Positions 32,256 to 54,291 of a stretch of DNA of 64,000 bases are shown here, piece after piece. The stretch is taken from the NCBI GenBank assembly GCA_965644315.1, contig CBFFRQ010000018.1, forward strand, positions 1,054,001 to 1,118,000. The letters are read 5' to 3'. Both the position numbers and the translations under genes were made by a program. The DNA is from Caecitellus pseudoparvulus (Eukaryota; Protista; Bigyra: Bicosoecida). Position 1 is the stretch's first letter. Every line of letters begins with the position of its first letter. The notes beneath the pieces are model-generated. The model was not told the origin of the DNA. It was given only the letters and a program-made list of their open reading frames with translations, and made no database searches.

Positions 32256-35200
32256 ATGAGTAAAACCAGAGTGCCTCCACAGCACTGGCTTTGCCGTGCG
32301 CTGCACAGCTGCTTGGTTTTGGCTTGCATTGCTCATGCTTACGGTGGGTGTGTAAGCTCAACTTCCGCCATGCTCAAAGGGCACTTGCGTTGCCGCGCAA
32401 ACACGCAGGTTCAAGCATATACCCCACAACGTGTGAGCTTGGATGGACGCTTCTTGATACAGGGGAGCCTGGCAAGCTTGTCAGGTGCCTTCAGTTCAAC
32501 CCCGTCAAGCTGACGCACTCAGCAGCAAACACCGCTTGCGTTGGTGGAACTCTGGCCATTGCACGGAGCCAGCCCGAGCTCAACTACATGTTCCAACTAT
32601 GTGCTACGCCTGATCGCGACTGCTGGCTGGGACACAAAGACTCTGGTGCCAACAACATCTGGCTACCCGTGGACACGAACCCGGCTTTCTCCACGAGCTT
32701 TGTGCCCTTGACTGATCCATCAACCTTCCAGCCGTTGCAAGGGGACACAGAAGCCCCATGGGCTGCATTTGAACCAGACGATGGCATTGTTCCTTGGGTC
32801 TCTGAGGACTGTGCTCACTTCGCCAGTGGCAGTGGAAATGCGACCATCATGGACGGCGCATGTGACGCGTTGCAGCCGAGTGTCTGCCAGACGCTTGCTC
32901 GGTGTCCAGCAGGGTGGTTCCGGAGTGGAACGATGTGCCAGGCATGCCCTCTTGGTCGCTACAACTCCCAGCCAACAACTGCAGGAGCTGAGGTGTGCCA
33001 GCCGTGCCTTGCGGGACGATACGGAGGAGCAGTTGGCTTGACAGACGCGCAGTGTTCTGGGCCATGCTCGGAAGGTCACTACTGCTCCGGGGCGAACACA
33101 AGCCCGACTGAATCTCCCTGCCCACCTGGTCGGTATGGCAGCAGCGAGGGTCTTGCGACGAGTGCCTGTAGTGGGCGTTGTGATGCAGGTTTCTACTGCG
33201 TGGGCGGCGAAGTGTCGCGGGAAGGCGTCGATGCGCTGCATCCTGAGGGGAAGAAGTGTGCTGCAGGAAGGTACGGTAACAGTGGAGAAGGCAGTTCATC
33301 ATGCACGGGACCGTGCCAGGCAGGTTACTTTTGCCCTGCAGGGAGCTGGAAGCGAAACATGTACCACTGCTCGCGAGACGCCACAGACCCGTCACAGCCA
33401 TTCATGTGCCTGAGCAACGATCCTGTTCCTGTCCTTGTGGAGTGCCCACACCAGCAAATCTGCCCGCTTGGCTCGGCAGAACCTCAACCGGTTCCACGGT
33501 ACTATCATTCATATTCTGACTTGTGCTGTGCAGCGCCTTGCCAAGAGGGGGAGTACTGTGTGAACGGCCAGGATCTCAAGTGTGCTGCAGGTTACTGGGG
33601 AGAAAGCAGCAATGAGCATGAAGATCCGACATGTGCTGGCCCTTGCACCGCTGGGTATCAGTGTCCTTTGGGCAGTGAGAGTCCAACCGCCTTTCCCTGT
33701 GGCTGGGACGTGGCGAACGACATGCCTCGGGCGTACCCTCGCAACTACTACTGCCCGGAAGGCACCAGCGAGTCCATAGTGGTCCCAGCTGATCACTACT
33801 CTACCGGTGGCTCCATCGAGACAAGAACTGGGATAGAAAAGTGCCCTGCCGACTATGCGTGTATTCTTGGATGGCATGAAATGAAGGTGGAGTACTATGA
33901 AGGCTGCACGCGGTACGTAGATGGGAGGGAGGGAAGCCGCACCTTCAGCGGGGCAGCCAGCGCTGACGAAAACACGTTGGATGCAGTTGCGGACATAACG
34001 GTTGCCATCCGTCCTCCTGGCTTAAACGTGACGTGGGCTGTTGCTGCATCTTGCAGCCGGCTTAGCTCTCAGTACTCCGGGCCAGAGCCACTGGACACCT
34101 CCTCTCAATTCTCGGTGACGGTCGGGCCTGCGACCTCCACAACCGTGTACGGGGAATGGCGCACTGCCACAGTGAGCGCTGCAGTCCCTCTCAACTACGA
34201 GGAGTGCGAAGTGCACGCTGTTAAGCTCGTGGCGACTGTCCTTGAACCAAGCGAGCCTCTGCCAGAGCACCAAGTGCAAGTGTTCGCGTGTGACTTGGCT
34301 GTGCAGGTGCGGGACACCAACGACCCGCCATACTTTGAAGGGGAAGACGGGGAAGACTTCTACGTTCGGGTGACTCCCGAGGGGGTGAACATCAACAGTC
34401 CTGTGGGAGAACCTGTGACGGCGAGTGATGAGGATGTCGGGCAGGAGCACACGTACATCATTACAGCAGGCAACAGTGAAGGCATGTTTGGCGTCACAAG
34501 GTGTGGAGGGCAACTCTTCACCTTGAACGATAGACTGGACTTTGAAGGCACTGCTGAGTACAATCTCACGTTGACTGTGGCTGATTCTGCCGAGAAGGGG
34601 CCTAGCCTTCAAGCCAGCACGACAGTGCGTGTGCTGCTGACCAATGTCAACGAGCAGCCCTTCTTCAATGTGTCATCAGGCACCCACGGCTGGTCAGTGG
34701 CTGAAAATGACGATGATGGCAGGCGGGTGCAACCATTGCCGGTGCTAGTTGTGGACCCAGATGGTGACAACCTCACCGTGTCAATTTCATTAAAGGATGG
34801 TGATGTGGAGAACCCAGCGCTTCAGTTGGAAGGGGGCGTCGGGCCGTGGCTCGAGACGGCATTTCCATTGGACTTCGAAGGCATCCAGAAGTACAGGTTG
34901 ACAGTCTTTGCCCATGACAGCGAGTTCACGATTGAGTTGGACGACGTTGTGGACGTGCTTGATCGCAACGACCCTCCCACCTTCGCACAAGCCTACTCAT
35001 TCGTCATCCCAGAGGACACCCCCTTCAACTTCTCATCCCCTCTCATCGAAGCTAGTGACCCCGATGGGGGTGCAGTTATCGCCATGTCCATCGTCGAAGG
35101 GAACGAAGACGGCGCTTTCCGCCTCGCCAGGGTGACTGACACCGCCTTCCAGCTGCAAGTGACGTCTGGTCTTGACTTCGAGTCAACTTTCTTCCGATAT

Positions 35201-38200
35201 CAGACACAGCAAGTTGGCCAAGTGCTGACACGCTTTCGACAAGTCCGAATCATGGCCAATGACAGCGTTGCAGTGGCTTTCACTGTGGCAAACATCACAG
35301 TGGAAGATGCGAACGAGCCCCCCAGCACAGCACCCTTTTTTAACGTCAACGTGTCTGAAAGCACCCCTGTTGGAGCCTTCTTTGGCCCAGCACCCAATGT
35401 TTCAGATCCTGAGTTTGCATTTTCTACCTATACCTGGTCTGTCTCGCCAAGTGGACTTGGCCCGCTGCCGTTCACGGTTGACCCGCGCACAGGACGACTG
35501 AGATTGACGGGAGCACTCGATTTCGAAGGAGGAGGGTCGAATCACTTCCATGCCATTCTTCACGTGGCAGACAGCGGCACGCCACCTCTATCGACCCAGG
35601 CGAATCTTTCTGTGCATGTAGAGAATGCTAATGAGCCGCCCCAGGTAAGCTCCGCCTCACTGGCGTTAATCGAGAACGCTGCCCCAGCGACTCAGGTTGG
35701 CCTACTGGCTGGGTTTGACGTCGATGCTGGAGATACCGCACACCTTCGATGGGCCCCCTGCAACAACTCCCACCCGCTTGCAACGCCCAGCGGGTGGGGG
35801 CTTTTCAACTTGACTGCTTCCGGGAACATCAGCGTGGCGGTGGGCGCCAACACGACAAACCCTTGGGCATCAGATTTGGACTTCGAAGACCGTGCAGTCT
35901 ACCAGCTTTGCGTTATCTGTACAGATCGCGGGATTGACGGGCCCCCACTCAGCACCGCCACAACCGTTGTTGTAACCCTCCTTGACGTGAACGAACCGCC
36001 TCGATTCTCCAGCGGAGTCCAAGTCATGACGATCGGAGACGGAACACCGGCTGGGGTGTCCCTCGGCATGATACAGATTGAGGATCAAGACTTTGCGGAC
36101 GTACACACGTTCTCCTTTCTGTCTGGGAACCTGTCTCTGTTTGAGACGACTGCGGATGGAAATGTGACCACGAGCCAAAGCGTGCGCATAGTCACGAGCG
36201 CTGAGCATGAAGTGTACGCCGTCAGGGCCGTCGACTCTGGAGGGTTCGTAGCCAACACAACCCTCAATATCACGATAGCTGACTCGAATGACCGCCCTGA
36301 GTTTTCAGGCTTCCCTCGTCTGGTGTCTGTGTTCGAGCACTCTACGTCCACAGTTCCCTTGCTTCAGGTGACGGCGACGGATGCCGACCCTGATGACACA
36401 TTACAGTTCTCCATCACCCAAATCGTGCCATCTCTCGCATCCAGCGCCATTCAGATTGACACGTCATCGGGGGAGGTTTCGATCGCGGACTCAGCTGCGT
36501 TAGATTTTGAAGGTTATGGGCAAGGCAATAGCGTGTGGAAGGTGTGGGTCCGAGTCAACGACAAGAATGACGCTGACCCTGGACATGTCTCCTTGAGCAA
36601 CGATGTTCTGGTAGAAATAGACGTGAAGGATGTGCCTGAGTCACCGAGCATCGTCCCGGCGGCTTTCTCCGTTCAGGAGAACCACGTCGGGCCCATCGGC
36701 ACCCTGACAGCCACTGACGCCGACTTTGACGAGGTCTTTGTGTGGGTCCTTCAAAATGTCTCTGCGACGGCTTCCTTTGACTCTAATGCGTTCGCCCTGA
36801 ATGCGACAACAGGTGAGCTATCAGTCATTCCTGGAAAAGTAGTTGACTTCGAGGCGCTGACTTCATCGAACCCGGTGGTGACTCTGACTGTCCGGGTAAC
36901 GGACAAGTATGGCGAAAGCGCAGTAAGGGATGTCCCAGTAAGTGTCGGCAACGAGAACGAAGCACCGTCAATAGAGTCTGCAGTAGGCAGAGTAGTTGAA
37001 GAAATTGTCGTGGCGCGAGTGACCGAGAGTGAGGGGTCATCGCCCCTCACCTTAGTCGTGTCAGATCCAGATTCCATGGCCTTGCCAATGGGACAAGTAG
37101 GGCTGTTCATCAGGGAAGTGTGGCCTTTTGAGAGCGTCATCCCGTTCTCCATCGTGAGCGAGGGCGGGACGTTTGGAGTCACCACGCAGCGCGCCCTTGA
37201 CTTTGAGAATGTTGGCCAGTGGACCCTGGATGTCTGCGTGGAGGACGGTGGCTCGCCACCCCTGCTCGCGTGCGCCCTGTTGAACGTATCTGTTGTGAAC
37301 GACCTCAGCGATGTTCGACTGACAAGCGTTCAGGGCTGGAGTGGAAACACTTCCGTGTCAACCGTGCAAGTCGACGACTTTGTGCGCATTTCGGGAGACA
37401 ATTTGGGCTTCACCAACCGACGCCTCGCACTCGGTGGTGAGCAACCCCTCTTGACTGCTTCAGTCAGCTTTGACTTGCAAGGCGAAGGATCGCTCGTAGC
37501 AGAAGTGGGAATTCCCTGCGAAGCCATCGTTGCAAACACAGTCGTACAATGCCCCGTGCCAGACGGCCTGGGCACTGGTGTTTGGTCTCTGCAAGTTGTC
37601 TTCAGTGCCACCGAGATTGCTTCCTCGACCTCAGCGGAGCCGATAAGGGTGCCATACTCCGCCCCTCTGCTTACCTCAGTTGATCGCGTAGATGGTGAGA
37701 GCATGGACTTGCTTCCTACTGCTGGTGGAGTGCAAGTCCGACTGCGAGGCGTCAACTTCGGCCCCTTATCAGCAACTCTTGGGGCGAATCCAGTCTCATA
37801 CGGGCGGAGTGGGGGCAGCGTCAGGGAAGGGCAACTTTGTGTTCGGGAAGCAGATGGAGGTGTCTCAGCCTTGCTGTGCATGACTGCACCCGCCGTTGGC
37901 ATCGAGCTGGAGTGGCAGGTGGCGCTGGGAGGCCAGCAGTCGAACCAGCTGCGTGTCGGGAAGCACAAGCGGCCGTCCGTTGACACAGTGCGCCTATTTC
38001 GAGATGCCACCCCGATAGCTTTTCTCTCCAGTGGAGGGTCTGAGTTTATACAAGTGCAAGGGGGAGACTTGGGGAATGCTGGGGTGCAGCTGGTGTACCG
38101 TCTTGCCACAGACAGTTCAGCAAACGGAGCGCTTGCCCGCTACAAGGGGACTAGCTGCAGCATTTCGCTGCCGCATGACACTGCTGTGTGCCAGTCGATG

Positions 38201-41200
38201 CCGGGGTCAGGACGCAACCATCGGCTGCAAGTGATAGTTGGCAGCGACGAGGACGGGTGGCAGACATCAGACCCAAGCACTGTGACAGTGAGCTATGGTG
38301 CCCCAAGTATTCAAGTAGGGGGGATATCAGGCCCAGGTGCCATTCGAGCTGATACTCAGGGGGGGCAGGTCATCATTGTCGCGGGCGCCAACTTCGGTGC
38401 CCGCACGCCGCTGTTGCCTGGTGCGCCTGCCGCATGTGGGGGCACGCCCCATCCGCCATCCTCTGTCCACCTGCTCGAGGATCCTTCCCTCTTGCCCTTC
38501 AATGTCACAAGCGAGGTGCCCCAGCTTGTTTATGGCCCTGCATCCGACCCCAACCGGTACAAGTCGTCAAGCTGCGTTGTTTCAAATGTGCAGTCCACGC
38601 GCCTCAGCTGTTGCTCTGCAGTGGGCACGGGAAAGGGTTTTGTGTACAGGGTGAGCGTGGATGGGCAAGAGTCCCCACTGCACGCCTCCCAGAACTCGAG
38701 CACGGGGTATCACCCCCCTGTTCTGCAATCCTTTGACCCACGAGATGCTCAAGGCAGGCGAACAGAGGGTGGTGGCGTCATCTCAGTGCTAGGCTCGTTT
38801 TTTGGGCCGAGCATGGAGTTCGTCGAGCAAGTGGCGTATGGAAAGGCCCCACTTGCGGAGAACCTTGAGTTCTCAGCGGAGAACTGCACCATGGTGCGGC
38901 CTCACTTTGAGCTCGAGTGCCTCACCGCTGAAGGTGCTGGCAAGGGACTGTCCTGGACGGTCAAGGTGAACGGCCAGCGGAGCGAGACTCCTACAACTGG
39001 GCACGAACACCCTCAAATATCTCATTTCTCCGGCCAAGCAATGCCTGTGGGGAGCGCGAGAGGGGGACAGTGGCTGATTGTCCATGGCAGTGACTTTGGG
39101 CCGCCAACTGGGACGGTTGAGTTCGGCGGGCAGGACTTCGTGGACTGGGTCAGGTACGGCCCGACAGGGGCGGAGTACACTGCCTCGTGCGCTGTGCTGT
39201 CGCACTTCTCGATGAACTGTACCACTGTGCCTGGCACTGGCCCCAACCTTTTGTGGACAGTGAGCGTCGCTGACCTTGTGTCTAGTCCATCTCTCACGCC
39301 TTGGTCCTACGCATCCGCCCGCATCCTGGACCTGCACTGGCAGGGGCAGCTGAGCACGGCCGGCAATGTGAACTTCTTCGTTAGGGGGACTGACTTCGGG
39401 ATTCTCGATGCCAATACCCTGCTGCGTGTGCGCTTTCGCCCAGAAGTGGGGAACGTGACCGTGCGACTGGTTGAAATAGCCCGGCCATTGCCAGCGAACG
39501 CGAGTCAAGACGAGCTGCAGGTCCGCGTGCCATTTGGCTGGGGGAGCTCTTGCGTGGTGACAGTGGAGAGTGTTACGGTGTTCAATGGCATCCAGCGTGG
39601 AGGCGTGCTGGTTTCGCAGCCGCTTTCTTTTTCATACGCTCCTCCTGCAGTGTCCGGAACCAGCGTCATTTCGGGAACCCGGCAAGAGATCACAATCGTT
39701 GGATCATCCTTTGGCGCAGTGAGAATTGCGGACAACATCACGTTCCCTTTGGGTGTGCTTGTGGTGCATGATGCTTCGTCCAATGAGACGCATTCTTCCG
39801 ATGATGGCTCAGGGGCGGTGCAGCTCCTGTCTTGGAGCCACTCACGAATCGTCGCGAGCATCACCGCCTCGCGCGGGCATGTGATTGTGAAGACATTCAT
39901 GACTTTTGCCAGCGATGGAGGCCCTGATTACTTCGCTTCGCCGGCCTCCCCGTTTGAGAGCTCCACCCCCCAGGCTACGACAGGCTGGATTGCCGGCCTG
40001 CGGGACGATCCCACGCAGTACAGACTGCCCACTCTCGGAGGGATGCAGCTCAACATCCGAGCCACAAATGTGGATGGTTGTGATGAGTCATCCTTGGAAG
40101 TGTACATTGGTGAGGCTGAGGAACTAGCATTGGGGGATCGATCAGATTGCGGCCTGGTGCCGTGCTTGGTCTCGAGAGGCCGGAGGGAGTGCGCTATCAC
40201 CAAAGTCGAACACACTGGTGAGGTGGCCCCTGGAACCACAGATCAACTGTCAAAGGTGTCGTGCATGACTCCTCCTGGCCAAGGCACGGTGGGGGGGCTC
40301 CCAATTTCGGAAGTGGAGAACGAACTGCAGGTGTCTCCCCGATCTGTGTGCACCGGGTGCGCTGGGCAGCGGTTGATCCTGAACTGCGCGGGGAAGTTCT
40401 CGGTCAACGAGCACATGCCAGTCCTGTCTTATGCCCGCCCTACCATCACGACTGTAACAGTGCTGCCAGGCTCCCACGACGCTGAGCTGGGAGAAAGCGC
40501 CGTGTTCGGCTGGACGCTGGACGTGGGCACACGGGGCGGCAGAGTCGGCGTGATGGGCCACAACTTTGGGCAGCTGAAGCACTGGGAGTTCGATGGCTTG
40601 CGTCCCGGAATGCTTGATGACTCGACTCTTGGTCCGCCCCTGTCCCAGCTTCCCCACTGGATGAATCACTCTGTCTTCGAGCTGTCTATCCCTCCACTCG
40701 TCCACGGCAGCCCGACCATGGCGGCATTCCCCATTCGCTTAGTTGTGGGGCCTGACCCAAACCTAGCCCTTGATGTGCCCCTTGTCAGTGCAACAGCAGT
40801 TGAGGACTACGCCTTCAGTTTGGAAGCGTATCAGCAGTTGTTCGGATACCCAGCGACTTCCCGAGAGGCCATTCACATACGTGTGCGGCCTCCAGTCGTT
40901 GCTGCCCAGGAAGTGTCGTTTGGAACAGCTGGCGGGGAGGTGCTGAGGCTGGAAGGAGACAACTTCGGGGAGGGCAGTAAGCCGCAGCATCTGCCGGAAG
41001 TCCTCATTGGCGGCAAGAAGTGCGTCTTGCAGGAGACATACGGGAGCCAGTCTGCAGCCCGTGCAGAGCTGGTGGCCAGCAACCCCGATTCACCACACGA
41101 AGTCATCACTTGCTTCGTTCCACCCGGAGTGGGGAGAAGCAAAGAAGTTCTGCTGCGTATCGGTGGCCACATGCTGTCTAACCAGCCAGGCGGGGGCCTC

Positions 41201-44200
41201 GAGCACGTCAAGGTCCACTACAGACCGCCGGAGGTGCAAGCCGTCCACCCCGAGCGCGGCCCCACCCAGGGCGGCACAGTCATCACCATGTCTGGACTCA
41301 ATTTTGGAGCTTCCGCAGAGGACGCCATGATTCTCTTTGCCTCCCAGACGTATCCCGTAGGAACCCCGGACGACATCACAGCTGTGGATCCAGAGAGCGA
41401 AGCCGACCTTGTTGGCGACCTCATCTCCTACAACCACACCCACGTGGTGTTCAAGGCACCAGCAGGTCAGGGAGAGATCAAGCAGGTGCAGCTTACAGTC
41501 GCTGGCCAAGTTTCGGTTGAGATTGAGCGCAGCGCGACGGCTGTCTGGCCTCCCCAACCACATGCAGCGTTTGAATACGGAGATCCCCGCATCACCTTCA
41601 TTCGCAAGAATGGGACATGCTTTACGGAGGGGTGCGAAGTGTCCCTGGAGGGTGAGAACTTTGGCCGCGCCGTGGTGGTCAACGGCTCAGTTCTGCAGCC
41701 ACTCACCATTGACGTACTGCCAGACAAGCTGCGCTGCCGGCTCGTGGCTTTGGAACACACCATAGCAAGGTGCCGCATTGGGGAGGGGATAGGCAAGCAC
41801 CGCAACATCCATTTTCAGCTGGGGTACAAGTCTGCAGACTTCCCATGGTTCACGTATGCCCCTCCCCTGCTCCGAGACGTGGTGCCCAACGTCGTCAATG
41901 CGCTGGGCGGCCGGACACTGCGGTTTGACGGCGTCAATTTCGGCCCCGTGAAGCCTACCTGGTCCCCTGCAGTGAACGTGACGCTGAACAATGCTACATG
42001 CGAGGGCGCCGCGGTGTTCAACTCTCACAACGAAATCAGGTGTGTGCAGCCGGCCGGCGTGGTCGGCCCTGCCATCGTGCAGATGACCATTGCAGGGAAT
42101 GAAATGGACCAAGACCCCGCTGAAATCGAGGGCTTGCTGCAGTATACGTGCGAGCGGGGTTGGTACGGCCAAGTCTCTGAAGTGTGCGTTCCCTGTCCAT
42201 TTGGTGCCGTGTGCGATTTTAGTGGCCGGTACAACTGCACTGCTTATCGCGGCACGGTGTGCACTGCGTACCCCGAGCCTTGGTCAGATGCGACGTTTTG
42301 GCGAGACGATAAGCCTGCCGACAGCGTGCTGTGCGACCCGCTGCGTCGGGTAAGGCCTCCCCCGTTCAACGGGACTTGCCCAGTTTTCCTCCGGTGCGAG
42401 CCAGAGAATGCCTGCCTCGGCAACAACACATGTGCGACGGGGTACACGGGCTTTCGCTGTTCGAGCTGCGCAGAGCGGTTCTACCGCTTCGACGGGGAGT
42501 GCAAGAGGTGCCCTGACCGAGACTGGTTGCTTCCCCTGCTGTTCGCGGTGGGTTTGATAGTCGTGGGTGGCTTCGGGTGGTGGCTGAACAAGAAGAACAT
42601 CAACCTAGCTCTCATGTCCATTTCAGTCGACTACATGCAAGTCTTAGCGCTTTTCGCCCGCTCGAAAATCGAGTGGCCGCAGCTCCTCAAGGACTTGTTC
42701 TCGTACATGTCATTCTTCAACTTCAACTTGGACATCACGGCGCCTGAGTGCGCCATGCCAGAGCTTGGGTACGGGACAAAGTGGACAGCGATCATGATTC
42801 TCCCGATGGCGATATTCTTCCTTTTCTGGCTCATGTACATCTGCACCCTGGCCTACAAGCGATTCGTTCGTCGACTGTCACCGAAGGCCAGGACTGCTCA
42901 CAGGGCACCCATCGTGGGGGCGTGCCTGACGCTCTCATACTTCATGTACCTGTACGTCTCCCGAACGGTACTCGACGTCTTCAACTGCAGCCCGACAGAT
43001 CCACCCGATGACTGGCCGCCCGGGTACATGCAGGCGGACTTCATTCCATGTTTCAAGCCGGGCGGGCTGCATGAGCGCCTCTTTCCTCCTGCCATCGTCC
43101 TGTTCTTTGTGTACGTACTGGCATACCCCATTTCGATTTTTCTGTGGCTCAGGCGCAACAAAGGTGTTGTGAAGGTGGACCAGCTGCTGCGAGCGTACGG
43201 CTACGGCGAATCTGAACGGACGTCAGACGCAAAGCACTACGGCTTCCGCCGCATGTTCCACAAGATCTACTACCACTTCAAGCCCGGAAAGTGGTACTGG
43301 ATCACAGTCATCATCACCCGGAAGTTCTTCATTGCCATAACCTCACTCCTATTCCGCTCCACGCCAGCGTACCAGATGGCCATGATTGTCATGGTCCTGT
43401 TCTTCGGATACTCTGCGCATATCCACGCCGAGCCCTTCATGTCACGCCCTGAGCACCGAGCCATCGTGCTCGCGCACGAGCGACAAGTTGCGGAGCACAA
43501 CACACAGCACCAGCTCATCGATGCCGAGCTGCAGCCACTGGTTTCCAAGGCGCGGCGCGCGGAGCGGGCAGAGTTCCGAAAGGTGGGCTTTAGGGCAGAG
43601 GAGAAGCGGGCCGCGGCAAAGGAAAGCAGTCAACTCCAAACAAACTACAACACAGTCGAGTCGGTGCTGCTCGTCAGCGCCATCCTTGTGGCCCTTTCCG
43701 GCATCATGTTCAACTCCAACAAGATGACAAACATGGAGAGCTCCCCCGCAAAGGACGCACTTACCATGCTCGTGTTATTGATCATTGCTGCGTCAGTTGC
43801 GTACTTCGTCATCGTGTTCACGGTGGAAATCGTTGAGACGATTGGCGACGACCCTGTCTGCTGCTGCCATTGCCTCCGTCCGCGCATCCGGAGGTGGGTC
43901 CTGTGCGCCGCCTGTGGACCGTGCCAGGTGGGGTATGCCGCCTTGAAGTGGGCACACAGTCGGTACTTGATGAGCCAGCGGCGCGTGGCGACGGTGGATG
44001 AGCTTGTGGAGGCTACACGAGCGAAAAGCAAGGAGGCCGACACAGATTCTCGGTTGAACCCCCTGGCGGCCATGGCACTTGCTCGCAATGCGGAGAAAGG
44101 AGGCGCTGGGCAAGCAATCGGGAAAGCCGACGCTCTCTTGAAGCAGCCATCTCCCCCGTCCCAGTCGGATTGGTTCTTGTTGCAGCTCGCTTTCAAAGAG

Positions 44201-44467
44201 CTTGAGCGCCTGGTGCAGCAAGAATTGCCGTCCAGCATTCGCACTGCCAAGCGCTCTGGCAGTCGCCAAAGGCTGAACCACTTCAAAGCAGCGATGCAAC
44301 AAGGCAACTTGATTCGAACAGGAAAGAAGGCCCGGCGTCAGTTCAGCCAGAAGCTGTCTGACCAGCCACAGAGTCCAGCCGCTGGGGCGCACCGTGGCAG
44401 GGACAGCAGTGCTATTTCATCCAGGCAAAGTAGTGGCGCAAAGCGAGTCAGCTCTCTTAATTTTTAG
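32256..44467 (+). CDS. Giant cadherin-repeat surface receptor: C-type-lectin-like, Cys-rich repeats, about 10 cadherin repeats, multiple IPT/TIG domains, Cys-rich region and a 9-TM module
   Basis: A signal exon (32256..32343) and a 65-nt intron precede a single 12-kb exon. Cadherin Ca-binding motifs LDFE/LNYE and linkers DTNDPP, NVNEQP, DRNDPP, DANEPP, NANEPP, DVNEPP, DSNDRP, DVPESP and NENEAP are present. IPT motifs T.GG...I.G.NFG recur, and about nine hydrophobic helices lie at roughly 42520-43830. Confidence 0.9.
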
Positions 44468-44527: not shown

Positions 44528-45520
44528 TCATGCGGCTCTCTTGATTGGGCGATCGCGGCGTGGGCTCCTGCTGGCCCCACGCTTTGCCGCCCCACCAATG
44601 TGCCGCACCTGTCCGCGTGCACCTCTGGCATCTGCACTGTGGTGCACTGCTGCCTGTCCTCGAAGCGCAGAGTGGGACGGCGGTTGGGACGGAGGCGGGG
44701 GGATGGAGCTGCCTGCTGCATACGGATTGAAGCCTGCTGGGCGCTGCCAAATGCTCGCGGCAGCGCCTGTGGCGACTGCAGCGGGACCTCGTCGGGGCGC
44801 ATGTGTCGGAGACGAATGGCGCGCAGGCTGCAGCGGTGCCAGAGGGGCTGGCGACGTTGACGGTCCGCCAGGGCTGCCAATGAGCACCTCGGCGCTGGCA
44901 GCGGGTGCGGGCTGGGGGGCCCGCGCGGGTGGTGCGAGCATAGTCTTGACCTCCTTCCCAGTCTTCTTTGCGAGGTACTTGGCGACGAACTTCCGAATCC
45001 GAGGGGAGGTCACGCTGCGGCTGAAGTGCCAGCGTCGCTCCTTGGCTCCTAGCTTGCGTTGCTTCTCATGCTCGACGATGCCGTGCACGATTTTCCGCAC
45101 AGTGACCTTGTAGGCGTCCTTGTCGACCAGTGCGCCAGACCTCAGCGCGGGAAGTGTCGCGAAGCGCACGACATCTGCCACCTTGCGTTTGAAGGAGTGG
45201 CGTGCCGACGAGGCGGACCTCCGCGGTTCGCTGTGCTGAGTGGGGGCAGCTCCCGTGCCCAATGAAGGCGCCTGCTCAGCATCACTGGCGGGGGAATCCT
45301 TGCTTGTCGTGCCAGCCTCTGGGTGGTCGGTGGCGTCAGGCTGGTGCTGGGGAGCAGGGTCGCCGCCGCCTTCCAGTCCGTCGGGAGCAGCGTCACCAGG
45401 GGTGGAGCCATCGTAGTCAAGGTCGATGGTGTCAGGTGACGGTTCTGGCGGCGTCGCTTCCTGACTTGCTTCCAGTGCTTGCGCTGTGCCAGATTTAAAC
45501 CCAGCCAGCAGAGCGTCCAT
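44528..45520 (-). CDS. Protein with an SRI-like (Set2-Rpb1-interacting) helical domain
   Basis: FKRKVADVVR...LVDKDAYKVTVRKIVHGIVEHE...RIRKFVAKYL, flanked by disordered acidic and Pro-rich regions. Confidence 0.6.
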   Translation of the reverse strand: MDALLAGFKSGTAQALEASQEATPPEPSPDTIDLDYDGSTPGDAAPDGLEGGGDPAPQHQPDATDHPEAGTTSKDSPASDAEQAPSLGTGAAPTQHSEPRRSASSARHSFKRKVADVVRFATLPALRSGALVDKDAYKVTVRKIVHGIVEHEKQRKLGAKERRWHFSRSVTSPRIRKFVAKYLAKKTGKEVKTMLAPPARAPQPAPAASAEVLIGSPGGPSTSPAPLAPLQPARHSSPTHAPRRGPAAVATGAAASIWQRPAGFNPYAAGSSIPPPPSQPPSHSALRGQAAVHHSADARGARGQVRHIGGAAKRGASRSPRRDRPIKRAA

Positions 45521-45852
45521 TGCTGCAGCGACGGAGTGAAACGCCTGGCTGCCTGCAAGCACAACTCGGTTCGAAGAAAGAGTCGTCTCGCCAGCAGCAG
45601 TTCAGTGCAGGCAAAAATGATGCAAAGCAGTTAAGTGCCCAATTTTTTGCCGCGGAGGAATCACCAGATGCAAGGTGAGTGCCCGGTGCTGAAGGTCAGC
45701 GTTTCATGTGGGGTTGGAATTTTGGCGCAGGCCGGCATGATGCGGGAAGGAAGGCGCAAGAAATATGAGTAGGGAGCACAAAGCCGGAACAGGTAACGCT
45801 TGATTAGCGGCCGCTTTTCCTCCATCTGTCTGCTCGCAGCATCCACTGGTAC

Positions 45853-48232
45853 CTAGCCTTCAGCCGGACTCACAGTGTACGACACGCGGGTCTCACCCTT
45901 CTTGACCTTCAGCTTCGTCACAGTGACAGTGCCCAGCTCTCCAGCACGATGGACATGGGTGCCTCCACACACGCAGCCGTTATTCGGAGCACCCACACAG
46001 ACCGCTCGCAGCGGCCGCTGGGCGAGCCCTGGCGCCAGCGACTCAGCTGCCACGCCAATGTTTGCCAGCCCGTCAGCGTCAGAAGGCGACAGGAAGTGCA
46101 CGTCGGTGGGGACATCCTCAGCGACGAGGCGCTTCAGCTCAGCATTGAGCCTCTCCACCAACGGCGCTCGTTCCGGCGCAGGCACGGCGCCTTCATAAGC
46201 CACCCACGCGCCATCTGGAAAGTGGTACCCTCGCCCCGGCACCAGCTGCACACCCACTCGGCGCATGGCAAGGTCGAGCAGGTGCCCTGCAGAGTGCAGC
46301 CGGGCAGCCAAGGACCGTGTGGGGCTGTGGACTGAGCTGGTCACCTTGGCGCCCGCGAATTGCTCGACTGAGGGGGCTGCCGCGCTGTCCCCGTCCACGC
46401 TGCAAAATAGCACAACTGCACTGGTGCCGGGCGAAGGCAAGGGCATGCTCCGAGCCGCTAGGACACGCAGGCATGCAGCTGGGTCGTGGACGACTAGGGT
46501 GCCGATGTCGCTGGGTTGCCCGCCCCCCCGAGGGTGGAACACACACGTGTCAAGCAGCAGACACACCACACTGGACGGCACCACGTCCGGCGGCAGCTTG
46601 GGCAGCTGCCCTTCCAGGCGCAGGGGCAGGGCAGGCAGGGGCACGTGGGGCCTGTCCTCTTTCTCCCCTGTCTCGGGGTGTCGCCCGGCTGACAGCACTG
46701 CCCCTGGCGCCACGCCGCCTGCCGAGAGCGCCACAGCGCACACCTTGCCGCCACTGCCCTCCAAGGCCTCACAGCGACCGGCTGCCACGATCACGGCGTC
46801 GCGCTCCAGCTGCTGGCTGTCTCGCATGTACAGCCGGTCTGTCTCCAGAGCCAGCGGCGGCCGTTGGGCCGCTTTGCGTATGGCGGTGACAGCCCCCACA
46901 ATAAGCTCCGCAGCACGCTGCACCTGGGCAAGCGTGGTGAACTTTCCGACAGAGCAGCGCACTGTGCTCAGGGCCACTTCAGCTGGCACGCCCATGGCCG
47001 TGAGGACGTGGCTTGGGCTTGCTAGGCCGCCCTCCTTGCATGCCGCACCGGCACTGACGGCCAGCCTCCCAGCCAGGGCGGCCTGCAGTTCCCGCGCGGC
47101 GACGCCGGGGAAGGCGATGCTGAGGGTGTTGGGCAGGCGTCTCTCTGTGGCGGCGGGGCCGTGCGTCAGGAAGGGGTGGGGCTCCTCCGCAGACCCTGCC
47201 GCGGCGCCCAGCCCCTCGGCAATGCCCTGTAGCAGGGCGGCACGCAGGGCCTCCAGCCGTGCACGGCCGCTCGAGGCCAAGGACGCCCCGGCCGCCTCAC
47301 AGGCGGCGCCGAGGGCCACAGCGCAGGGCACGGGCTCCGTGCCGGGGCGCCGGCCCGCCTCCTGCCCCCCCCCGAAGAGCAGGGGCGCCGGCATGCGCTC
47401 CGACGGCACGGAGCAGGCCACCAGGGCGCCGATGCCCTTGGGCGCGTACAGCTTGTGCCCGGCCACTGTGATGAAGTCCGCCCCTGCGGCGGGCAGCCCC
47501 TCCACGGGCACCTTGCCCAGGCTCTGGCTCGCGTCGACGTGCACGAGGAGGGGATGGGGGTTGCCGTCCGCGGCGCCCCTGGCAGCCGACACGATGGAGG
47601 CGATGTCCTGCAGGGTGCCCACTTCGTTGTTGGAGTGCATGAGAGACAGCAGCACGGTGTGGCGGGTCACAGCGGCCGCTGCGGCAGCGGGGCTCAGGAA
47701 GCCCTCCCCATCCACTGCCAGGGTGGTCACGGTGGCCAAGCCTTGGGACTGGGCGAACGCCAGTGTGCGCTGTGTCGCACAGTGCTCAACTGTGCTGGGC
47801 GGGGCGGGCACACTGCGAGGCGGTGGGTGCGCGCGGCAGATGGCTGGCACACGCACTGGCAGTGGTGATGACGTGTGGGAGGTGTGGGGCAAGCGCCGCA
47901 GCGCACCGGCGAATGGTTCCGAGAATGGCCCAGTTACTGGCCTCTGTCCCGCCCGACGTGAAGGTGACGCTGGGGGGCCCGAGGTTGAAGAGGGAGGCCA
48001 CCTGGGCACGGGCCTGCTCCAGCGCTGCTCGGGCCGATTGCCCGTACTCGTGTGACGAGGACGGGTTCCCCCACGCTTGGAGCATGGCATCATGGGCAGC
48101 ACGAGCAACGTCTTTGTCGACGGGGGTGGTTCCGTTGTAGTCCATGAAGATGCAGCCCTCATGAAAGCCCTCGGTGGAGGGCTGGGCAGGGCCAATTCCC
48201 GCACCAGCGGCTGGTGGGGCTGCGCCCTCCAT
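45853..48232 (-). CDS. Fusion: selenocysteine lyase/cysteine desulfurase (class V PLP) + AlaX tRNA-editing domain
   Basis: Exon 1 (48232..47857) and exon 2 (47789..45853) are separated by a 67-nt intron. Lyase motifs: MDYNGTTP, GNPSSSH, FTSGGTEA, HSNNEVGT, HVDASQ, AGHKLYAPKG (PLP Lys), RPGTE, SAGAAC (catalytic Cys). AlaX motifs: TDRLY, FHPRGGGQPSD, HSAGH and CGGTH (Zn ligands). Confidence 0.9.
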
Positions 48233-48384: not shown

Positions 48385-49806
48385 ATGGCAGCCGCGCCTG
48401 AGGCTGCCTCTTCAGGCACGCGCATCCCGGTCGCAGTTGTGGATGACCACCATCATGTGCTTGCTCATTGGCAGCGGTGGAAAGATGCAGGCCTTCTGCC
48501 GTCTGGGGTGCACATGGTTCACTTTGACTCGCACGCTGACCTGGGCTGTGGCTCCCCGCTGGACGCGAGCGGAGACCTCGCCGCCGCCCAAGCCAGCCTG
48601 TCGAGATCTGACAGCGGCATCGCGGAGTGGATTCTTCCGCTAGCCTTTTTTGGGGATGTGGCCTCCGTGCACTGGTGGCGTCCTCGCTTCATCACCGAAA
48701 CAAGCGCGCCCGCAGAGCACCCTGATGAGGGCAGCAAGCCTCAGCTCGAGGGAAGCAGCCCACCCTCCGATGCAGGCAAGGGGCTGTGCACTGTTGTGCA
48801 GTGGGGTGCTGACCAAGATGTGGTGGTGGGGAAGGATACACGACCGCCTCCTGCGGCTGCCCCGAGCACCGCAGCTGAAGGAGAAATCCGCCTGGCAGTG
48901 CACTTCCCTGCCGCGTACTACGTGTCGGAAGGCGCCCACGCCCCTCTTGACTGCTTGGAGTCTCCAACAACATTTAATTTGACAGTGGGGAGTGAAGCAC
49001 GCCTTGATATGCAGGTGCCCGAGCCTGACGAGGCGTGCAGCGCGGCGCAGAGCAACCCGTGGGTTCTGGACGTCTGTTTGGACTACTTTCACTGCAGGAA
49101 CTACTTCATGGAAGACATGCTGTCCCACTTGTCCAGAAACCAAGTCGCAACGTTGAGGCGGGTGTTTGACGCAGAAGCTGCGATTGTCGGCATGCCCATA
49201 GAGCGTGCACAGGCTCTCGTGCGTGAGCACACGTGGCTTCTTGGCTGCATGCTGCGCTGCTCGGTAGAAAGTGCGCAGCCCTCACCACGACTGAATATGC
49301 CAGCATTTTTTGAGGATGCTGGTCTTGAGCTGCAGGAGTTCACGCGCGAAGCAGGGGAGGGCTTGGCGACGGTGCTGCACGAAGCCGGCCTTGCCCTTGA
49401 AGCCGCGCAGCTGCACTCCGCTGCGGAAGCCTTCAAGGAAGGAGACACTTCGCTGCCCGAGGCAGCCAGTGACCAGCCCCTTGTCGCGTCGATGATAGAG
49501 TCCGGAGGGCCGTGTCTGATCCAGCCTCACACAGCAACAACTGCTGAAAGCATGTTGGACAGCTTGGGCCGCTTCAAGGAGTGGCTGGCCTCGCAGGCCA
49601 CGCTCCCGGCAGCCATCACGATTGCGTGCTCCACTGGAGACGAGTTTGTCCCCCAGAAAGTGGTGCGGTGGCTGCTGCCTCAAGTGCTGTCCAGCATCGG
49701 AGAAGCCTGCGCGTGTGGTGGTTTGGAGTCGCAGGGTTCCCTTTGCATTCACGCAGACCCATCTGTGGAGCACTTTCTTGGTCGATCCAGCTCAGACTCT
49801 GGATGA
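48385..49806 (+). CDS. UPF0489 (C5orf22-like) protein
   Basis: Motifs IPVAVVDDHHHVL, MVHFDSHADL, IAEWILPL, WVLDVCLDYF and ITIACS. Confidence 0.85.
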   Translation: MAAAPEAASSGTRIPVAVVDDHHHVLAHWQRWKDAGLLPSGVHMVHFDSHADLGCGSPLDASGDLAAAQASLSRSDSGIAEWILPLAFFGDVASVHWWRPRFITETSAPAEHPDEGSKPQLEGSSPPSDAGKGLCTVVQWGADQDVVVGKDTRPPPAAAPSTAAEGEIRLAVHFPAAYYVSEGAHAPLDCLESPTTFNLTVGSEARLDMQVPEPDEACSAAQSNPWVLDVCLDYFHCRNYFMEDMLSHLSRNQVATLRRVFDAEAAIVGMPIERAQALVREHTWLLGCMLRCSVESAQPSPRLNMPAFFEDAGLELQEFTREAGEGLATVLHEAGLALEAAQLHSAAEAFKEGDTSLPEAASDQPLVASMIESGGPCLIQPHTATTAESMLDSLGRFKEWLASQATLPAAITIACSTGDEFVPQKVVRWLLPQVLSSIGEACACGGLESQGSLCIHADPSVEHFLGRSSSDSG

Positions 49807-51871
49807 TGCTCCCCGCATAGGACCACGCTGAAGGGTGGCCCCCCTGCTCCTTCCGCTGGCAGGATGCTGACTTGGCCGGCTGTAGGTCCGACACGCTGGT
49901 TGTGAGCGCTCACTGCAAGTAGGGCTGCAGCAAAGCCACCGGCGCAGTGCCCTGCTTCCTGCAGAAGCACGGAACACTGATGTTCTGTGTCCTCACCGGC
50001 TGCTGCAGCCAGCACTGCATCCCGAGCCCGGCGACCGAGCACCTCCGCCTGCGAGTGTTGTGCGCATGGGTGAGGTGAGAAAGCAGGGCATAGCTGTCTT
50101 CACGCACGCTGTGCCGTCGATCAGCTTCTCCATCCTGAAAGGCGATGGACCGCAGGACCTGTGCCATGAGCTGCTGCAGCGAAGTTTTGCTCGTGCGTGC
50201 TGGGCGTGCAGAAGGCTGCAGCACTGCCAAGAGGTCCTCCACGTCGGCAGCGTCCAAATTGTCCAAAGCTGCAACAAGCTCCGCGTCCTCCATGTCGGAC
50301 CAGGCAGGCGACGCCCGCGAGTGAACCTTGTCGCTGCCCTCTGCTGGGACTTTGGGTGACGGCGTAGTATCTGGTATTTGAGCTTTCGTTGGCTCCAAGC
50401 TCTCAAGCAGGTGCTCCAGTGCAGCTGCACCGCGAAGGGCAGCGTCATCGTCTGCTCCCGCATTCTCACAGCTCCCGCTGCGCTCCTTCACGGCTGCTGT
50501 GGGGACGCCCTTCTTTGCCCCCGGCATACAAGCCAAGGCAGCTTCGCGTCGACTAGCAAGTCTGCTCAGTCCTGGGCCGGTGTCTGGGGGAGAGAGCAGC
50601 AGCTCTCTGGCCTGCACAAGGCGCTCCTGGCTTCCTATGATTGAGGCGATGCTGGGACTTTGCAAGGCAAGCTCCCACGCTCTCTGACTTTCTTCCAGTT
50701 GTGCAGCCCTCGAAGCCTGAATCTGTGGCAGGGTCTGCTCGCAGACCAAGCTCCTACTCCACCAATCACTCCTATTGCGACCCTGCAGCTTCCTTGACAT
50801 GTTTGCCACCTGTTGCCGGGCCTGGGCAAGGTTTGCCTGCGTCCAGGCGAAGTAGGCCGCGCTTGATGTAGGCTGGTCAGGCGCCCGGGCCCGTTTCCTG
50901 TCCCTCGCAGGCTGCCGCTTCGCTTCGAGCGCGCGCATGGTCTGCTGCAGGTCCGCGGGGATCGACACAGAGCAAGGGCTTTCCCAGTGCGGAGCATCCA
51001 TCATGAACCACGTCATTTCTGTGCCTTTTCCGCACTCGGCAACGCACCTCGGCGCTGGCGCCCGGAAGCCAGCGCCTCTGCGCAAGGCAGGGCCAGCAAG
51101 CATGATCTCACGCGGCGCCTTGAGCCCCGCCCCTCGAGCAGCGAACCTGGTGGTCCTCTTTCCTTCTCTTTGTGCCTTCTCCAGTGCGCCAGCTGCGTCC
51201 TCAGCCGCATCTGCCACAGGTTTGCCCCAGCGCGCCAGCCACCTGAAGTCAACTGGTTGCCTCGCTTGAGAGGGCACAGCAGGGCTGGCGGAGGGTGGCG
51301 AAGCTGCTGACGTTCTGCTTGGGGCGGAAGGTGGTTGTCTCACATGTTGTTGTGAGGCAGCGAGGGATGTGCTTGTGGGGCTCCGCGGCTGAGTTGCACA
51401 GCGCTTCTCTGGCTCTTGATCTTCCCCTCCGGCGGCACGCCCTTCAACAGGCGAGGCAAGTGCGCCCCCCCCAGGCAGAGCAAACCAAGACGGTTGGTCC
51501 AGTTCCCGAAATTCAGACCGGAAGCGGCGAAGGAGAGCTTGCGCGCCCGGCGTCAGGCCCGCCTGCTTGTCTGGCAGTGGGAGCAAAGCAGCCTGCACGC
51601 GCGGGTTCTGCAGCAAGCCCGCACCGACACCTGGAGGCAGCGTCGCAACGACAGCCCACGGAGCCGCAAGAGCAGCCTTTGTGCTGTACCTTCCCCACGC
51701 GTCACTACCTCTCTGGACGTTGCTGGCGTTCAGCGCGGTGATGGCCGTGCGAAGCGAAAGTGGTTGCAACGCAGCATCTGCGTCAGGCATTGCAGCTTCT
51801 TCACTGCCAGGCGCCTCACGTGCGGCTTCGGAGTGTGCATGGCTACGCGCAGAAGTCTGCACGGTGAACAT
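49749..51871 (-). CDS. Hypothetical protein; start uncertain
   Basis: A 653-aa ORF. A phase-0 GT-AG intron (50107..50049) shifts it into the frame of ORF 49749..50042. No family recognised. Confidence 0.5.
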
Positions 51872-52416
51872 GACTGCAAGGCGCTTCTCAACTCTGGTGA
51901 GCGCCCCAGAAACAACCCTGCACGGGAGAGATTCGTTGTGGAGGTGCTTGCATGAAACGCCGCGTTTCCGAGGCTCTTCACAAACCGTGCAATTCTCCCT
52001 GTCTGGGACACACTTTTCTGCAGTGCTCCAGCATCTTCATCGAGTGCATGCCTGTCAGGTAAGGTGTCGGATGGCTTGCTTGGCAAGCGGTGGCTGCCAA
52101 GTCCGGCGTTCGCTGCCGGTAATGTGGCAGCACGAAGTCGCTTGGCACCACCCATGGCACTGGCAGTTGCAATGGATGGGTCCCTTGAAAGGTGGGTCCG
52201 ACCGGGGCACAGACTCGGGGCTGTCGCCAAGCCTACATGTCGGGGATCGCCGAAGGCTTGCGTGGGCGGTGACCGAGCCACGGTGTCCTCAAATTCACGG
52301 GAGCTCATTCGGCGCACGACTGTGCAGCACCCGCACACGCTTCAAGCAGAAGCACACAGGCTTGGGAGTGGGCGTGTTGGGTCACGCACAATGGGTGGTG
52401 CATTGGACGTGGGATT

Positions 52417-54291
<1,875 letters not shown>

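What the first reader, a model, noticed from the sequence alone, without database searches (positions are those of the whole stretch)
45853..48232. Selenocysteine lyase/cysteine desulfurase fused to an AlaX tRNA-editing hydrolase
Seen: an intact class V PLP lyase (PLP Lys in GHKLY, catalytic Cys in SAGAAC) runs in frame through a short linker (AIRKAAQRPPLALE) into an AlaX-M-type domain retaining all four Zn ligands (HSAGH, CGGTH). There is no mitochondrial presequence. Established: these lyases convert Cys or Sec to L-alanine plus S or Se, and AlaX proteins deacylate mischarged tRNA-Ala. GAAC is closer to selenocysteine lyase than to the GSAC of Nfs1/IscS. Inference: both halves concern alanine or near-alanine amino acids, so the fusion could be a quality-control module that removes Cys or Sec from tRNA and destroys it, or converts it on the tRNA. 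Alternatively, the lyase may supply sulfur for a metal or Fe-S site in AlaX.
Basis: partly seen in the sequence, partly recalled or inferred. Interest (0 to 1): 0.85.

Follow-up and report, generated by a model that had tools for sequence, protein, structure and literature searches.

The report
Conserved Cys/Sec lyase–tRNA deacylase fusion
Several deep-branching single-celled eukaryotes (stramenopiles) have kept, over a long evolutionary span, one protein that joins an enzyme that destroys cysteine or selenocysteine to an enzyme that strips wrong amino acids off tRNA; I found no description of this pairing, and it may be a built-in guard against selenium or sulfur amino acids ending up in the wrong place in proteins.

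Summary
Real and conserved. The same fusion occurs in about 40 distinct proteins at 33-49% identity, including Cafeteria, Platysulcus and transcript-derived ORFs, so it is neither read-through nor misassembly. Both halves exist separately in other eukaryotes. The lyase is not Nfs1: it lies in a eukaryotic clade beside prokaryotic lyases often fused to SelD, and is this Sec-using genome's only selenocysteine-lyase candidate. It lacks the Asp that makes mammalian SCLY Sec-specific, so it probably takes Cys and Sec. The AlaX keeps its four metal ligands, but four pocket residues differ from AlaRS; bacterial relatives often neighbour Fe/2OG oxygenases, as in non-canonical amino-acid clusters. Best guess (0.4): a tethered module that removes Sec/Cys-like residues from tRNA and turns the freed amino acid into alanine. 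Coupling is untested; no fused-specific residues, rigid interface or RNA reads for this organism were found. No paper or earlier scan note on this fusion turned up.

The parts
47857..48232 (-). Exon 1 (376 nt): start codon, short acidic/Ala-Pro-rich N-terminus without presequence, first 125 codons of the lyase (DYNGTT, GNPSS, SGGTE)
47790..47856 (-). 67-nt GT..AG intron, phase 1; inferred from sequence and family alignment, no RNA reads
   Evidence: family motif; no RNA holder
45853..47789 (-). Exon 2 (1937 nt): rest of lyase, linker and whole AlaX domain in one open frame, ending in the stop codon
46885..48145 (-). Group I NifS-type PLP lyase domain (aa about 30-427): stacking His128 followed by Cys129 (SCLY Asp146 position), PLP Lys238, catalytic Cys376, carboxylate-binding Arg403
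46843..46884 (-). Linker (13-14 aa here; 9-66 aa, low-complexity and unconserved in relatives)
45856..46842 (-). AlaX-M-type deacylase (aa 442-770): N-terminal barrel with T..LY and PxGGGQP motifs, editing domain with metal ligands His624, His628, Cys733, His737; pocket Gly627, Gly644, Tyr647, Cys731; no C-Ala domain
46620..46740 (-). Approximate position of a low-confidence, lineage-specific insertion in the AlaX N-terminal barrel (aa about 477-516)
   Evidence: low pLDDT stretch; not conserved

Best explanation
A cytosolic, two-domain 'deacylate and destroy' enzyme. Shown: one gene, both active sites intact, kept across deep stramenopile lineages. From family knowledge: the lyase half, as a PLP dimer, turns free Cys or Sec into L-alanine plus enzyme-bound S or Se, and the AlaX half hydrolyses an aminoacyl-tRNA ester. 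Inferred: the AlaX pocket, which differs from serine editors, removes a beta-substituted alanine (Sec, Cys or a similar analogue) from a wrongly charged tRNA such as Sec-tRNA(Cys); the tethered lyase then consumes the released amino acid so it cannot be recharged, and hands the selenium to selenophosphate synthetase. The tether gives proximity and fixed stoichiometry, not a sealed channel.
For: About 40 distinct fusions (42 clusters at 90%, 33 at 55%) with all catalytic and metal residues invariant or nearly so. One origin is not rejected (AU p 0.30). Lyase clade sits beside prokaryotic lyases, 47 of them SelD-fused in my set; NifS-SelD fusions deliver Se (PMC4561486). It is the only group I lyase besides Nfs1 in a genome with SepSecS, Sec-containing SPS2 and tRNA-Sec. 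AlaX pocket has G/G/Y/C where the genome's own AlaRS has T/Q/S/E; T567, Q584 and S587 are editing-site residues of E. coli AlaRS (PMC5409826; E664 from my knowledge). 15 of 80 prokaryotic loci of this AlaX subfamily neighbour Fe/2OG oxygenases, the layout in which AlaX proteins were shown to remove non-canonical amino acids; 11% of a large AlaX cluster sits by Cys biosynthesis genes (PMC13149037). CysRS generally does not exclude Sec (PMC13103439).
Against: No AlaX is shown to hydrolyse Cys- or Sec-tRNA in the papers I read; human AlaX is Ser-specific (PMC11260482). The pocket is the same in fused and stand-alone members, including land plants and Patescibacteria, so fusion brought no visible adaptation. 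0 of 80 prokaryotic loci have the lyase within 4 kb. Linker unconserved, and the long-linker model gives pTM 0.67 against about 0.59 expected for free domains. Oomycetes have the lyase alone, and a MAST-4-type lineage seems to have split the two.
Confidence: 0.4

Rival explanations
1. Selenium-pathway partner with different substrates: the lyase is the cell's selenocysteine lyase feeding SPS2, and the AlaX is a serine editor that, tethered to the Sec machinery, clears surplus Ser-tRNA(Sec) (and Ser-tRNA(Ala)) when selenium is short.
For: Human AlaX hydrolyses Ser-tRNA(Sec) in vitro (PMC11260482). Trypanosome SCLY binds SPS2 (PMC7595633). Host has full Sec machinery and no other SCLY candidate.
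Against: That activity was shown for the AlaX-L type with a C-Ala domain, absent here. This subfamily is kept in plants, which lack Sec (PMC4561486), and lacks the canonical serine pocket.
Confidence: 0.22
2. Inherited but uncoupled fusion: two housekeeping genes fused once in an early stramenopile; both are needed, so both stay intact, but they work independently.
For: Linker 9-66 aa and unconserved; no fused-specific active-site change; no confident interface; halves separate in most eukaryotes and apparently split again in some stramenopiles; no prokaryotic co-location.
Against: Kept across Platysulcus, Cafeteria and many unnamed lineages at 33-49% identity; the substrates of the two families differ by one atom (Ser, Cys, Sec), which makes a chance pairing less likely (inference).
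Confidence: 0.25
3. The lyase supplies sulfur (persulfide) to the AlaX Cys residues, to build a metal/Fe-S site or to switch editing on and off with sulfur or selenium status.
For: Subfamily has an extra Cys two residues before the metal Cys (CxCGGTH in most members); group I lyases pass persulfide to partners (PMC3266270).
Against: Stand-alone orthologues have the same CxC without a lyase; HxxxH/CxxxH is a mononuclear Zn-type site in solved AlaX structures (family knowledge).
Confidence: 0.07
4. The lyase converts Cys or Sec to Ala while it is still on the tRNA.
For: PLP enzymes acting on aminoacyl-tRNA exist (SepSecS, SepCysS); an AlaX could hold the tRNA end.
Against: The carboxylate-binding Arg is invariant, as expected for a free amino acid; the product would be Ala on a non-Ala tRNA, which is itself an error and which AlaX proteins normally spare.
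Confidence: 0.04
5. Artefact: misassembly or read-through of neighbouring genes.
For: No RNA reads for this organism.
Against: Independent contigs span the junction; about 40 relatives, several from transcript assemblies, hold both halves in one ORF.
Confidence: 0.02

Closest known systems
Selenocysteine lyase SCLY (mammals, trypanosomes)
   Same: Group I NifS fold (Z 52, rmsd 1.8 over 385-390 residues), GAACH-type Cys loop in most of the family, no presequence, Sec-using host.
   Different: Asp146 and Val256 equivalents absent; His389 is Lys here; carries a C-terminal AlaX. Structure score ties with Nfs1, and no metazoan SCLY sequence was in my trees.
NifS-SelD fusions (bacteria, Thorarchaeota, some amoebae; PMC4561486)
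   Same: Nearest prokaryotic relatives of the lyase half; lyase N-terminal, partner C-terminal.
   Different: Partner is a tRNA deacylase, not selenophosphate synthetase; SPS2 is a separate gene here.
AlaX-M (Pyrococcus, PDB 2E1B) and the AlaRS editing domain
   Same: N-terminal barrel plus editing domain, four metal ligands, no C-Ala.
   Different: Pocket T/Q/S/E replaced by G/G/Y/C; far below the AlaXM cut-off (56 vs 300 bits). Belongs to a separate subfamily found stand-alone in plants, Capsaspora, Trichoplax, ciliates and many bacteria, for which I found no biochemical study.
Resistance deacylases BesG and AlfB of non-canonical amino-acid clusters (PMC13149037)
   Same: AlaX-family deacylase linked to an enzyme acting on a free amino acid; bacterial members of this subfamily show such neighbourhoods.
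   Different: Those are separate bacterial genes beside biosynthetic enzymes; here it is a eukaryotic fusion to a degrading enzyme. Whether BesG/AlfB are in this subfamily was not testable (no sequences held).
YbaK Cys-tRNA deacylase (PMC11295145)
   Same: Removes Cys from tRNA, the activity proposed here.
   Different: Unrelated INS fold; no lyase attached.

Membership tests
Group I NifS-type Cys desulfurase / Sec lyase | PLP Lys in GHK motif, stacking His, carboxylate Arg | tested here: met
Group I NifS-type Cys desulfurase / Sec lyase | Catalytic Cys in the long group I loop | tested here: met
   Cys376; present in 35/35 non-redundant fusions
Group I NifS-type Cys desulfurase / Sec lyase | Fold | tested here: met
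   Z 50-53 to Nfs1, SCLY, IscS versus 42-44 to SufS (Platysulcus model)
Group I NifS-type Cys desulfurase / Sec lyase | Cys/Sec to Ala activity | not testable with these tools
   needs enzyme assay
Sec-specific SCLY (mammalian type) | Asp at position 146 | tested here: not met
   Cys here; V/P/C/I/A/E and never Asp in 35 fusions; determinant from PMC3266270
Sec-specific SCLY (mammalian type) | His389 and Val256 | tested here: not met
   Lys and Ala here; His in 30/35 and Val in 1/35 of the fusions
Sec-specific SCLY (mammalian type) | Orthology to metazoan SCLY | tested here: inconclusive
   profile and structure scores tie with IscS/Nfs1; no metazoan sequence in trees
Nfs1/IscS | EHK and GSACT motifs, mitochondrial presequence, grouping with Nfs1 | tested here: not met
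   genome has a separate Nfs1 with these motifs; query groups elsewhere; below all IscS/NifS cut-offs exon by exon; no presequence
NifS-SelD fusion | SelD (AIRS) domains on the same chain | tested here: not met
   SPS2 is on another contig
AlaX-M | HxxxH and CxxxH metal ligands | tested here: met
   invariant
AlaX-M | N-terminal barrel present, C-Ala absent | tested here: met
AlaX-M | Curated model score (NF040865) | tested here: not met
   56.3 vs 300 bits
AlaX-M | Serine-editing pocket residues as in AlaRS (T567, Q584, S587, E664) | tested here: not met
   G, G, Y, C against the genome's own AlaRS. The Q/S register rests on a profile alignment; HMMER placed it two residues off against A. fulgidus AlaRS
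AlaX-M | Hydrolysis of Ser/Gly-tRNA(Ala) | not testable with these tools
   needs assay

The most novel reading that the evidence does not exclude
The AlaX subfamily fused here is a selenocysteine/cysteine-tRNA deacylase, and the fusion is a dedicated proofreading enzyme against selenocysteine mischarging: it frees Sec from Sec-tRNA(Cys), destroys it, and recycles the selenium to selenophosphate synthetase. The stand-alone orthologues in land plants and bacteria would then be an overlooked defence against selenium toxicity.
Probability: 0.25. Interest if true: 0.9.

Novelty: new variant of a known kind. Interest (0 to 1): 0.66.

Why it matters
It links selenium/sulfur amino-acid breakdown to translation proofreading in one chain. 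It also gives a concrete substrate hypothesis for a widespread, apparently unstudied AlaX subfamily present in crops, protists, some animals and many bacteria. Sec mischarging by CysRS is a recognised cause of selenium toxicity and I found no editing enzyme described for it. Cafeteria and thraustochytrid-type hosts are culturable, and both activities have standard assays, so the question is directly testable. If the halves prove uncoupled, it remains a useful shared character for early stramenopile relationships.

Tried and rejected
RNA evidence for this organism: no RNA holder; the laid contigs are DNA-like, one keeps the intron. Literature: two searches pairing AlaX with desulfurase or Sec lyase gave no relevant paper; the library lacks most subscription journals. 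Earlier scan notes: none on this fusion. Organism names for MMETSP0963 and GECG01 could not be confirmed; from memory they are a thraustochytrid and Halocafeteria. ESM Atlas gave only bacterial desulfurases at 0.8. Single-sequence PDB search of the AlaX half was blank; the profile found AlaX-M and AlaRS. Prokaryotic co-location of the two genes: 0 of 80. Fused-specific residues: only scattered non-catalytic differences. Rigid interface: not supported by the long-linker model. A careful-mode tree did not return; quick trees were used. Novoa 2015 was not held. Database searches were made exon by exon by reference; the joined 770-aa model was never sent to a search tool and was used only inside local scripts for numbering, alignment and trees.

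Full report
The gene. The finding lies on the minus strand of a compact, about 62% GC eukaryotic genome (30.6 Mb, 215 contigs). It starts at 48232 and stops at 45853. The intron is inferred; no RNA run holds this stretch. The junction between the two domains lies inside exon 2 with no stop. NCBIfam and Pfam score a NifS-type lyase followed by an AlaX-M-like domain. An independent contig covers the whole gene without gaps and another spans the junction; strain variants spare all motif residues. Searches were run exon by exon; the joined model was used only in local scripts.

It is a conserved fusion. Two searches returned proteins matching both halves; 60 besides a partial one hold both domains, forming 42 clusters at 90% and 33 at 55% identity. 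Named carriers are Cafeteria (KAA0155887.1) and Platysulcus tardus; P0007, P0022 and P0130 come from MMETSP transcriptomes and P0133 and P0138 are transcript-style ORFs marked complete, so both halves are on one mRNA in several lineages. Seven metagenome loci hold both in one ORF. A relative at 41-49% identity keeps neighbouring genes. The host is probably a Bigyra-type stramenopile (weak grouping with Cafeteria); the 97% match labelled Symbiodinium KB8 is likely contamination, since that assembly also holds a Cafeteria-type copy (inference). Each half exists alone elsewhere: the lyase in oomycetes, Bigelowiella, Chlorokybus and Hanusia, the AlaX in land plants, Capsaspora, Nuclearia, Trichoplax, a ciliate and MAST-4. 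Trees do not resolve fused lyases as one clade, but one origin is not rejected (AU p 0.30). The simplest reading is fusion in an early stramenopile with later splits or losses (inference); several origins are not excluded.

The lyase. PLP Lys, catalytic Cys, stacking His and carboxylate Arg are invariant or nearly so. It is not Nfs1: the genome has a separate gene with Nfs1 motifs, and these two are the only group I lyases found. All fused lyases fall in a mostly eukaryotic clade (support 98 FastTree, 93 SH-aLRT) next to prokaryotic lyases that include most of 47 SelD-fused proteins; support for that sister relation is moderate (84-88). NifS-SelD fusions are known selenium donors (PMC4561486). 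The genome encodes SepSecS, an SPS2 with an in-frame TGA and tRNA-Sec. But the residue shown to give human SCLY its Sec specificity, Asp146 (PMC3266270), is Cys here and never Asp in 35 fusions. Structure scores tie between SCLY and Nfs1. So it works like an SCLY-branch enzyme that probably accepts both Cys and Sec; it fails membership of the Sec-specific type.

The deacylase. It has the AlaX-M layout and all four metal ligands, and is the only free AlaX found here; the other tRNA_SAD hits are AlaRS and two ThrRS-like genes. Against the genome's own AlaRS, the pocket positions T567, Q584, S587 and E664 (E. coli numbering) read G, G, Y, C. T567, Q584 and S587 are editing-site residues (PMC5409826). 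The same pocket is in fused and stand-alone members, so it marks a subfamily, not the fusion. In prokaryotes none of 80 loci has the lyase nearby, but 15 neighbour an Fe/2OG oxygenase, some with proline-pathway enzymes, and two follow a threonine-aldolase-like gene. AlaX proteins in such clusters were shown to remove non-canonical amino acids, and many AlaX genes sit by cysteine biosynthesis genes (PMC13149037). Its substrate is therefore open, and serine should not be assumed.

Architecture. The linker is 9-66 aa and unconserved. Both domains fold with high confidence. The short-linker model has pTM 0.72 against about 0.5 expected for free domains, but the long-linker Platysulcus model has 0.67 against about 0.59 (my rough estimate), and both are monomers of a dimeric enzyme. 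I read this as a flexible tether with no demonstrated interface.

Mechanism. Best explanation (0.40): AlaX releases a beta-substituted alanine such as Sec or Cys from mischarged tRNA and the lyase converts the free amino acid to alanine, passing selenium to SPS2. CysRS generally charges Sec (PMC13103439), which supplies the need. Shown: gene, motifs, conservation, clade, host machinery. Inferred: substrate of the AlaX, any coupling. Rivals: uncoupled inherited fusion (0.25); serine editor tethered to the Sec pathway, since human AlaX hydrolyses Ser-tRNA(Sec) (PMC11260482; 0.22); sulfur supply to the AlaX site (0.07); conversion on tRNA (0.04); artefact (0.02).

Novelty. Both domains are known; I found no paper and no earlier scan note on their fusion, though public databases hold the Cafeteria protein as a plain cysteine desulfurase. 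I rate it a new variant of a known kind, interest 0.66: real, old, unexpected and easy to test, with function unproven.

Noticed in passing
L059, L067, L068, L073, L078, L081, L083, L084, L098, L101, L106 (cyanobacteria), L063, L094 (actinobacteria), L054, L093: The same AlaX subfamily sits beside WelO5-like Fe/2OG oxygenase genes, in several Nostoc loci also a pyrroline-5-carboxylate reductase and a Zn dehydrogenase: candidate non-canonical amino-acid clusters with a resistance deacylase.
   Followed up: partly
L050:2763-4624 and L093:1980-4630: A threonine-aldolase-like PLP enzyme gene lies just upstream of the AlaX gene in two unrelated bacteria, a possible parallel deacylate-and-destroy pairing.
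   Followed up: partly
P0420, P0157 and P0283, P0284, P0287 (L035, L036): Lyases sister to fused P0139 end in low-complexity tails instead of AlaX, while stand-alone AlaX proteins (one named MAST-4) sister to P0139 carry mitochondrial-looking N-termini: possible fission with retargeting.
   Followed up: partly
window 32291-44467 (+): Single 4058-aa intronless ORF with cadherin repeats, IPT/TIG domains, Cys-rich repeats and a C-terminal multi-pass membrane region.
   Followed up: partly
window 48388-49806 (+): UPF0489 (C5orf22-like) gene, divergent from the fusion with only about 155 bp between start codons; same arrangement in L004/L005.
   Followed up: partly
window 49910-51871 (-) and 44528-45562 (-): Two long ORFs with no Pfam match; the second lies where L004 has an SRI-domain gene.
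   Followed up: no
window about 52400-54200 (-): Multi-exon WD40 gene of the RBBP4/CAF1C type.
   Followed up: no
P0185: A NifS-like protein fused to a TrmO tRNA-methyltransferase domain, another lyase-tRNA enzyme fusion.
   Followed up: no
P0473, P0442: NifS-SelD fusions in a eukaryote (gene id m51a1, Mastigamoeba from memory) and in Thorarchaeota.
   Followed up: no
P0002, P0278: Two different copies of this stramenopile gene are filed in NCBI under Symbiodinium sp. KB8, suggesting contamination of that assembly.
   Followed up: no
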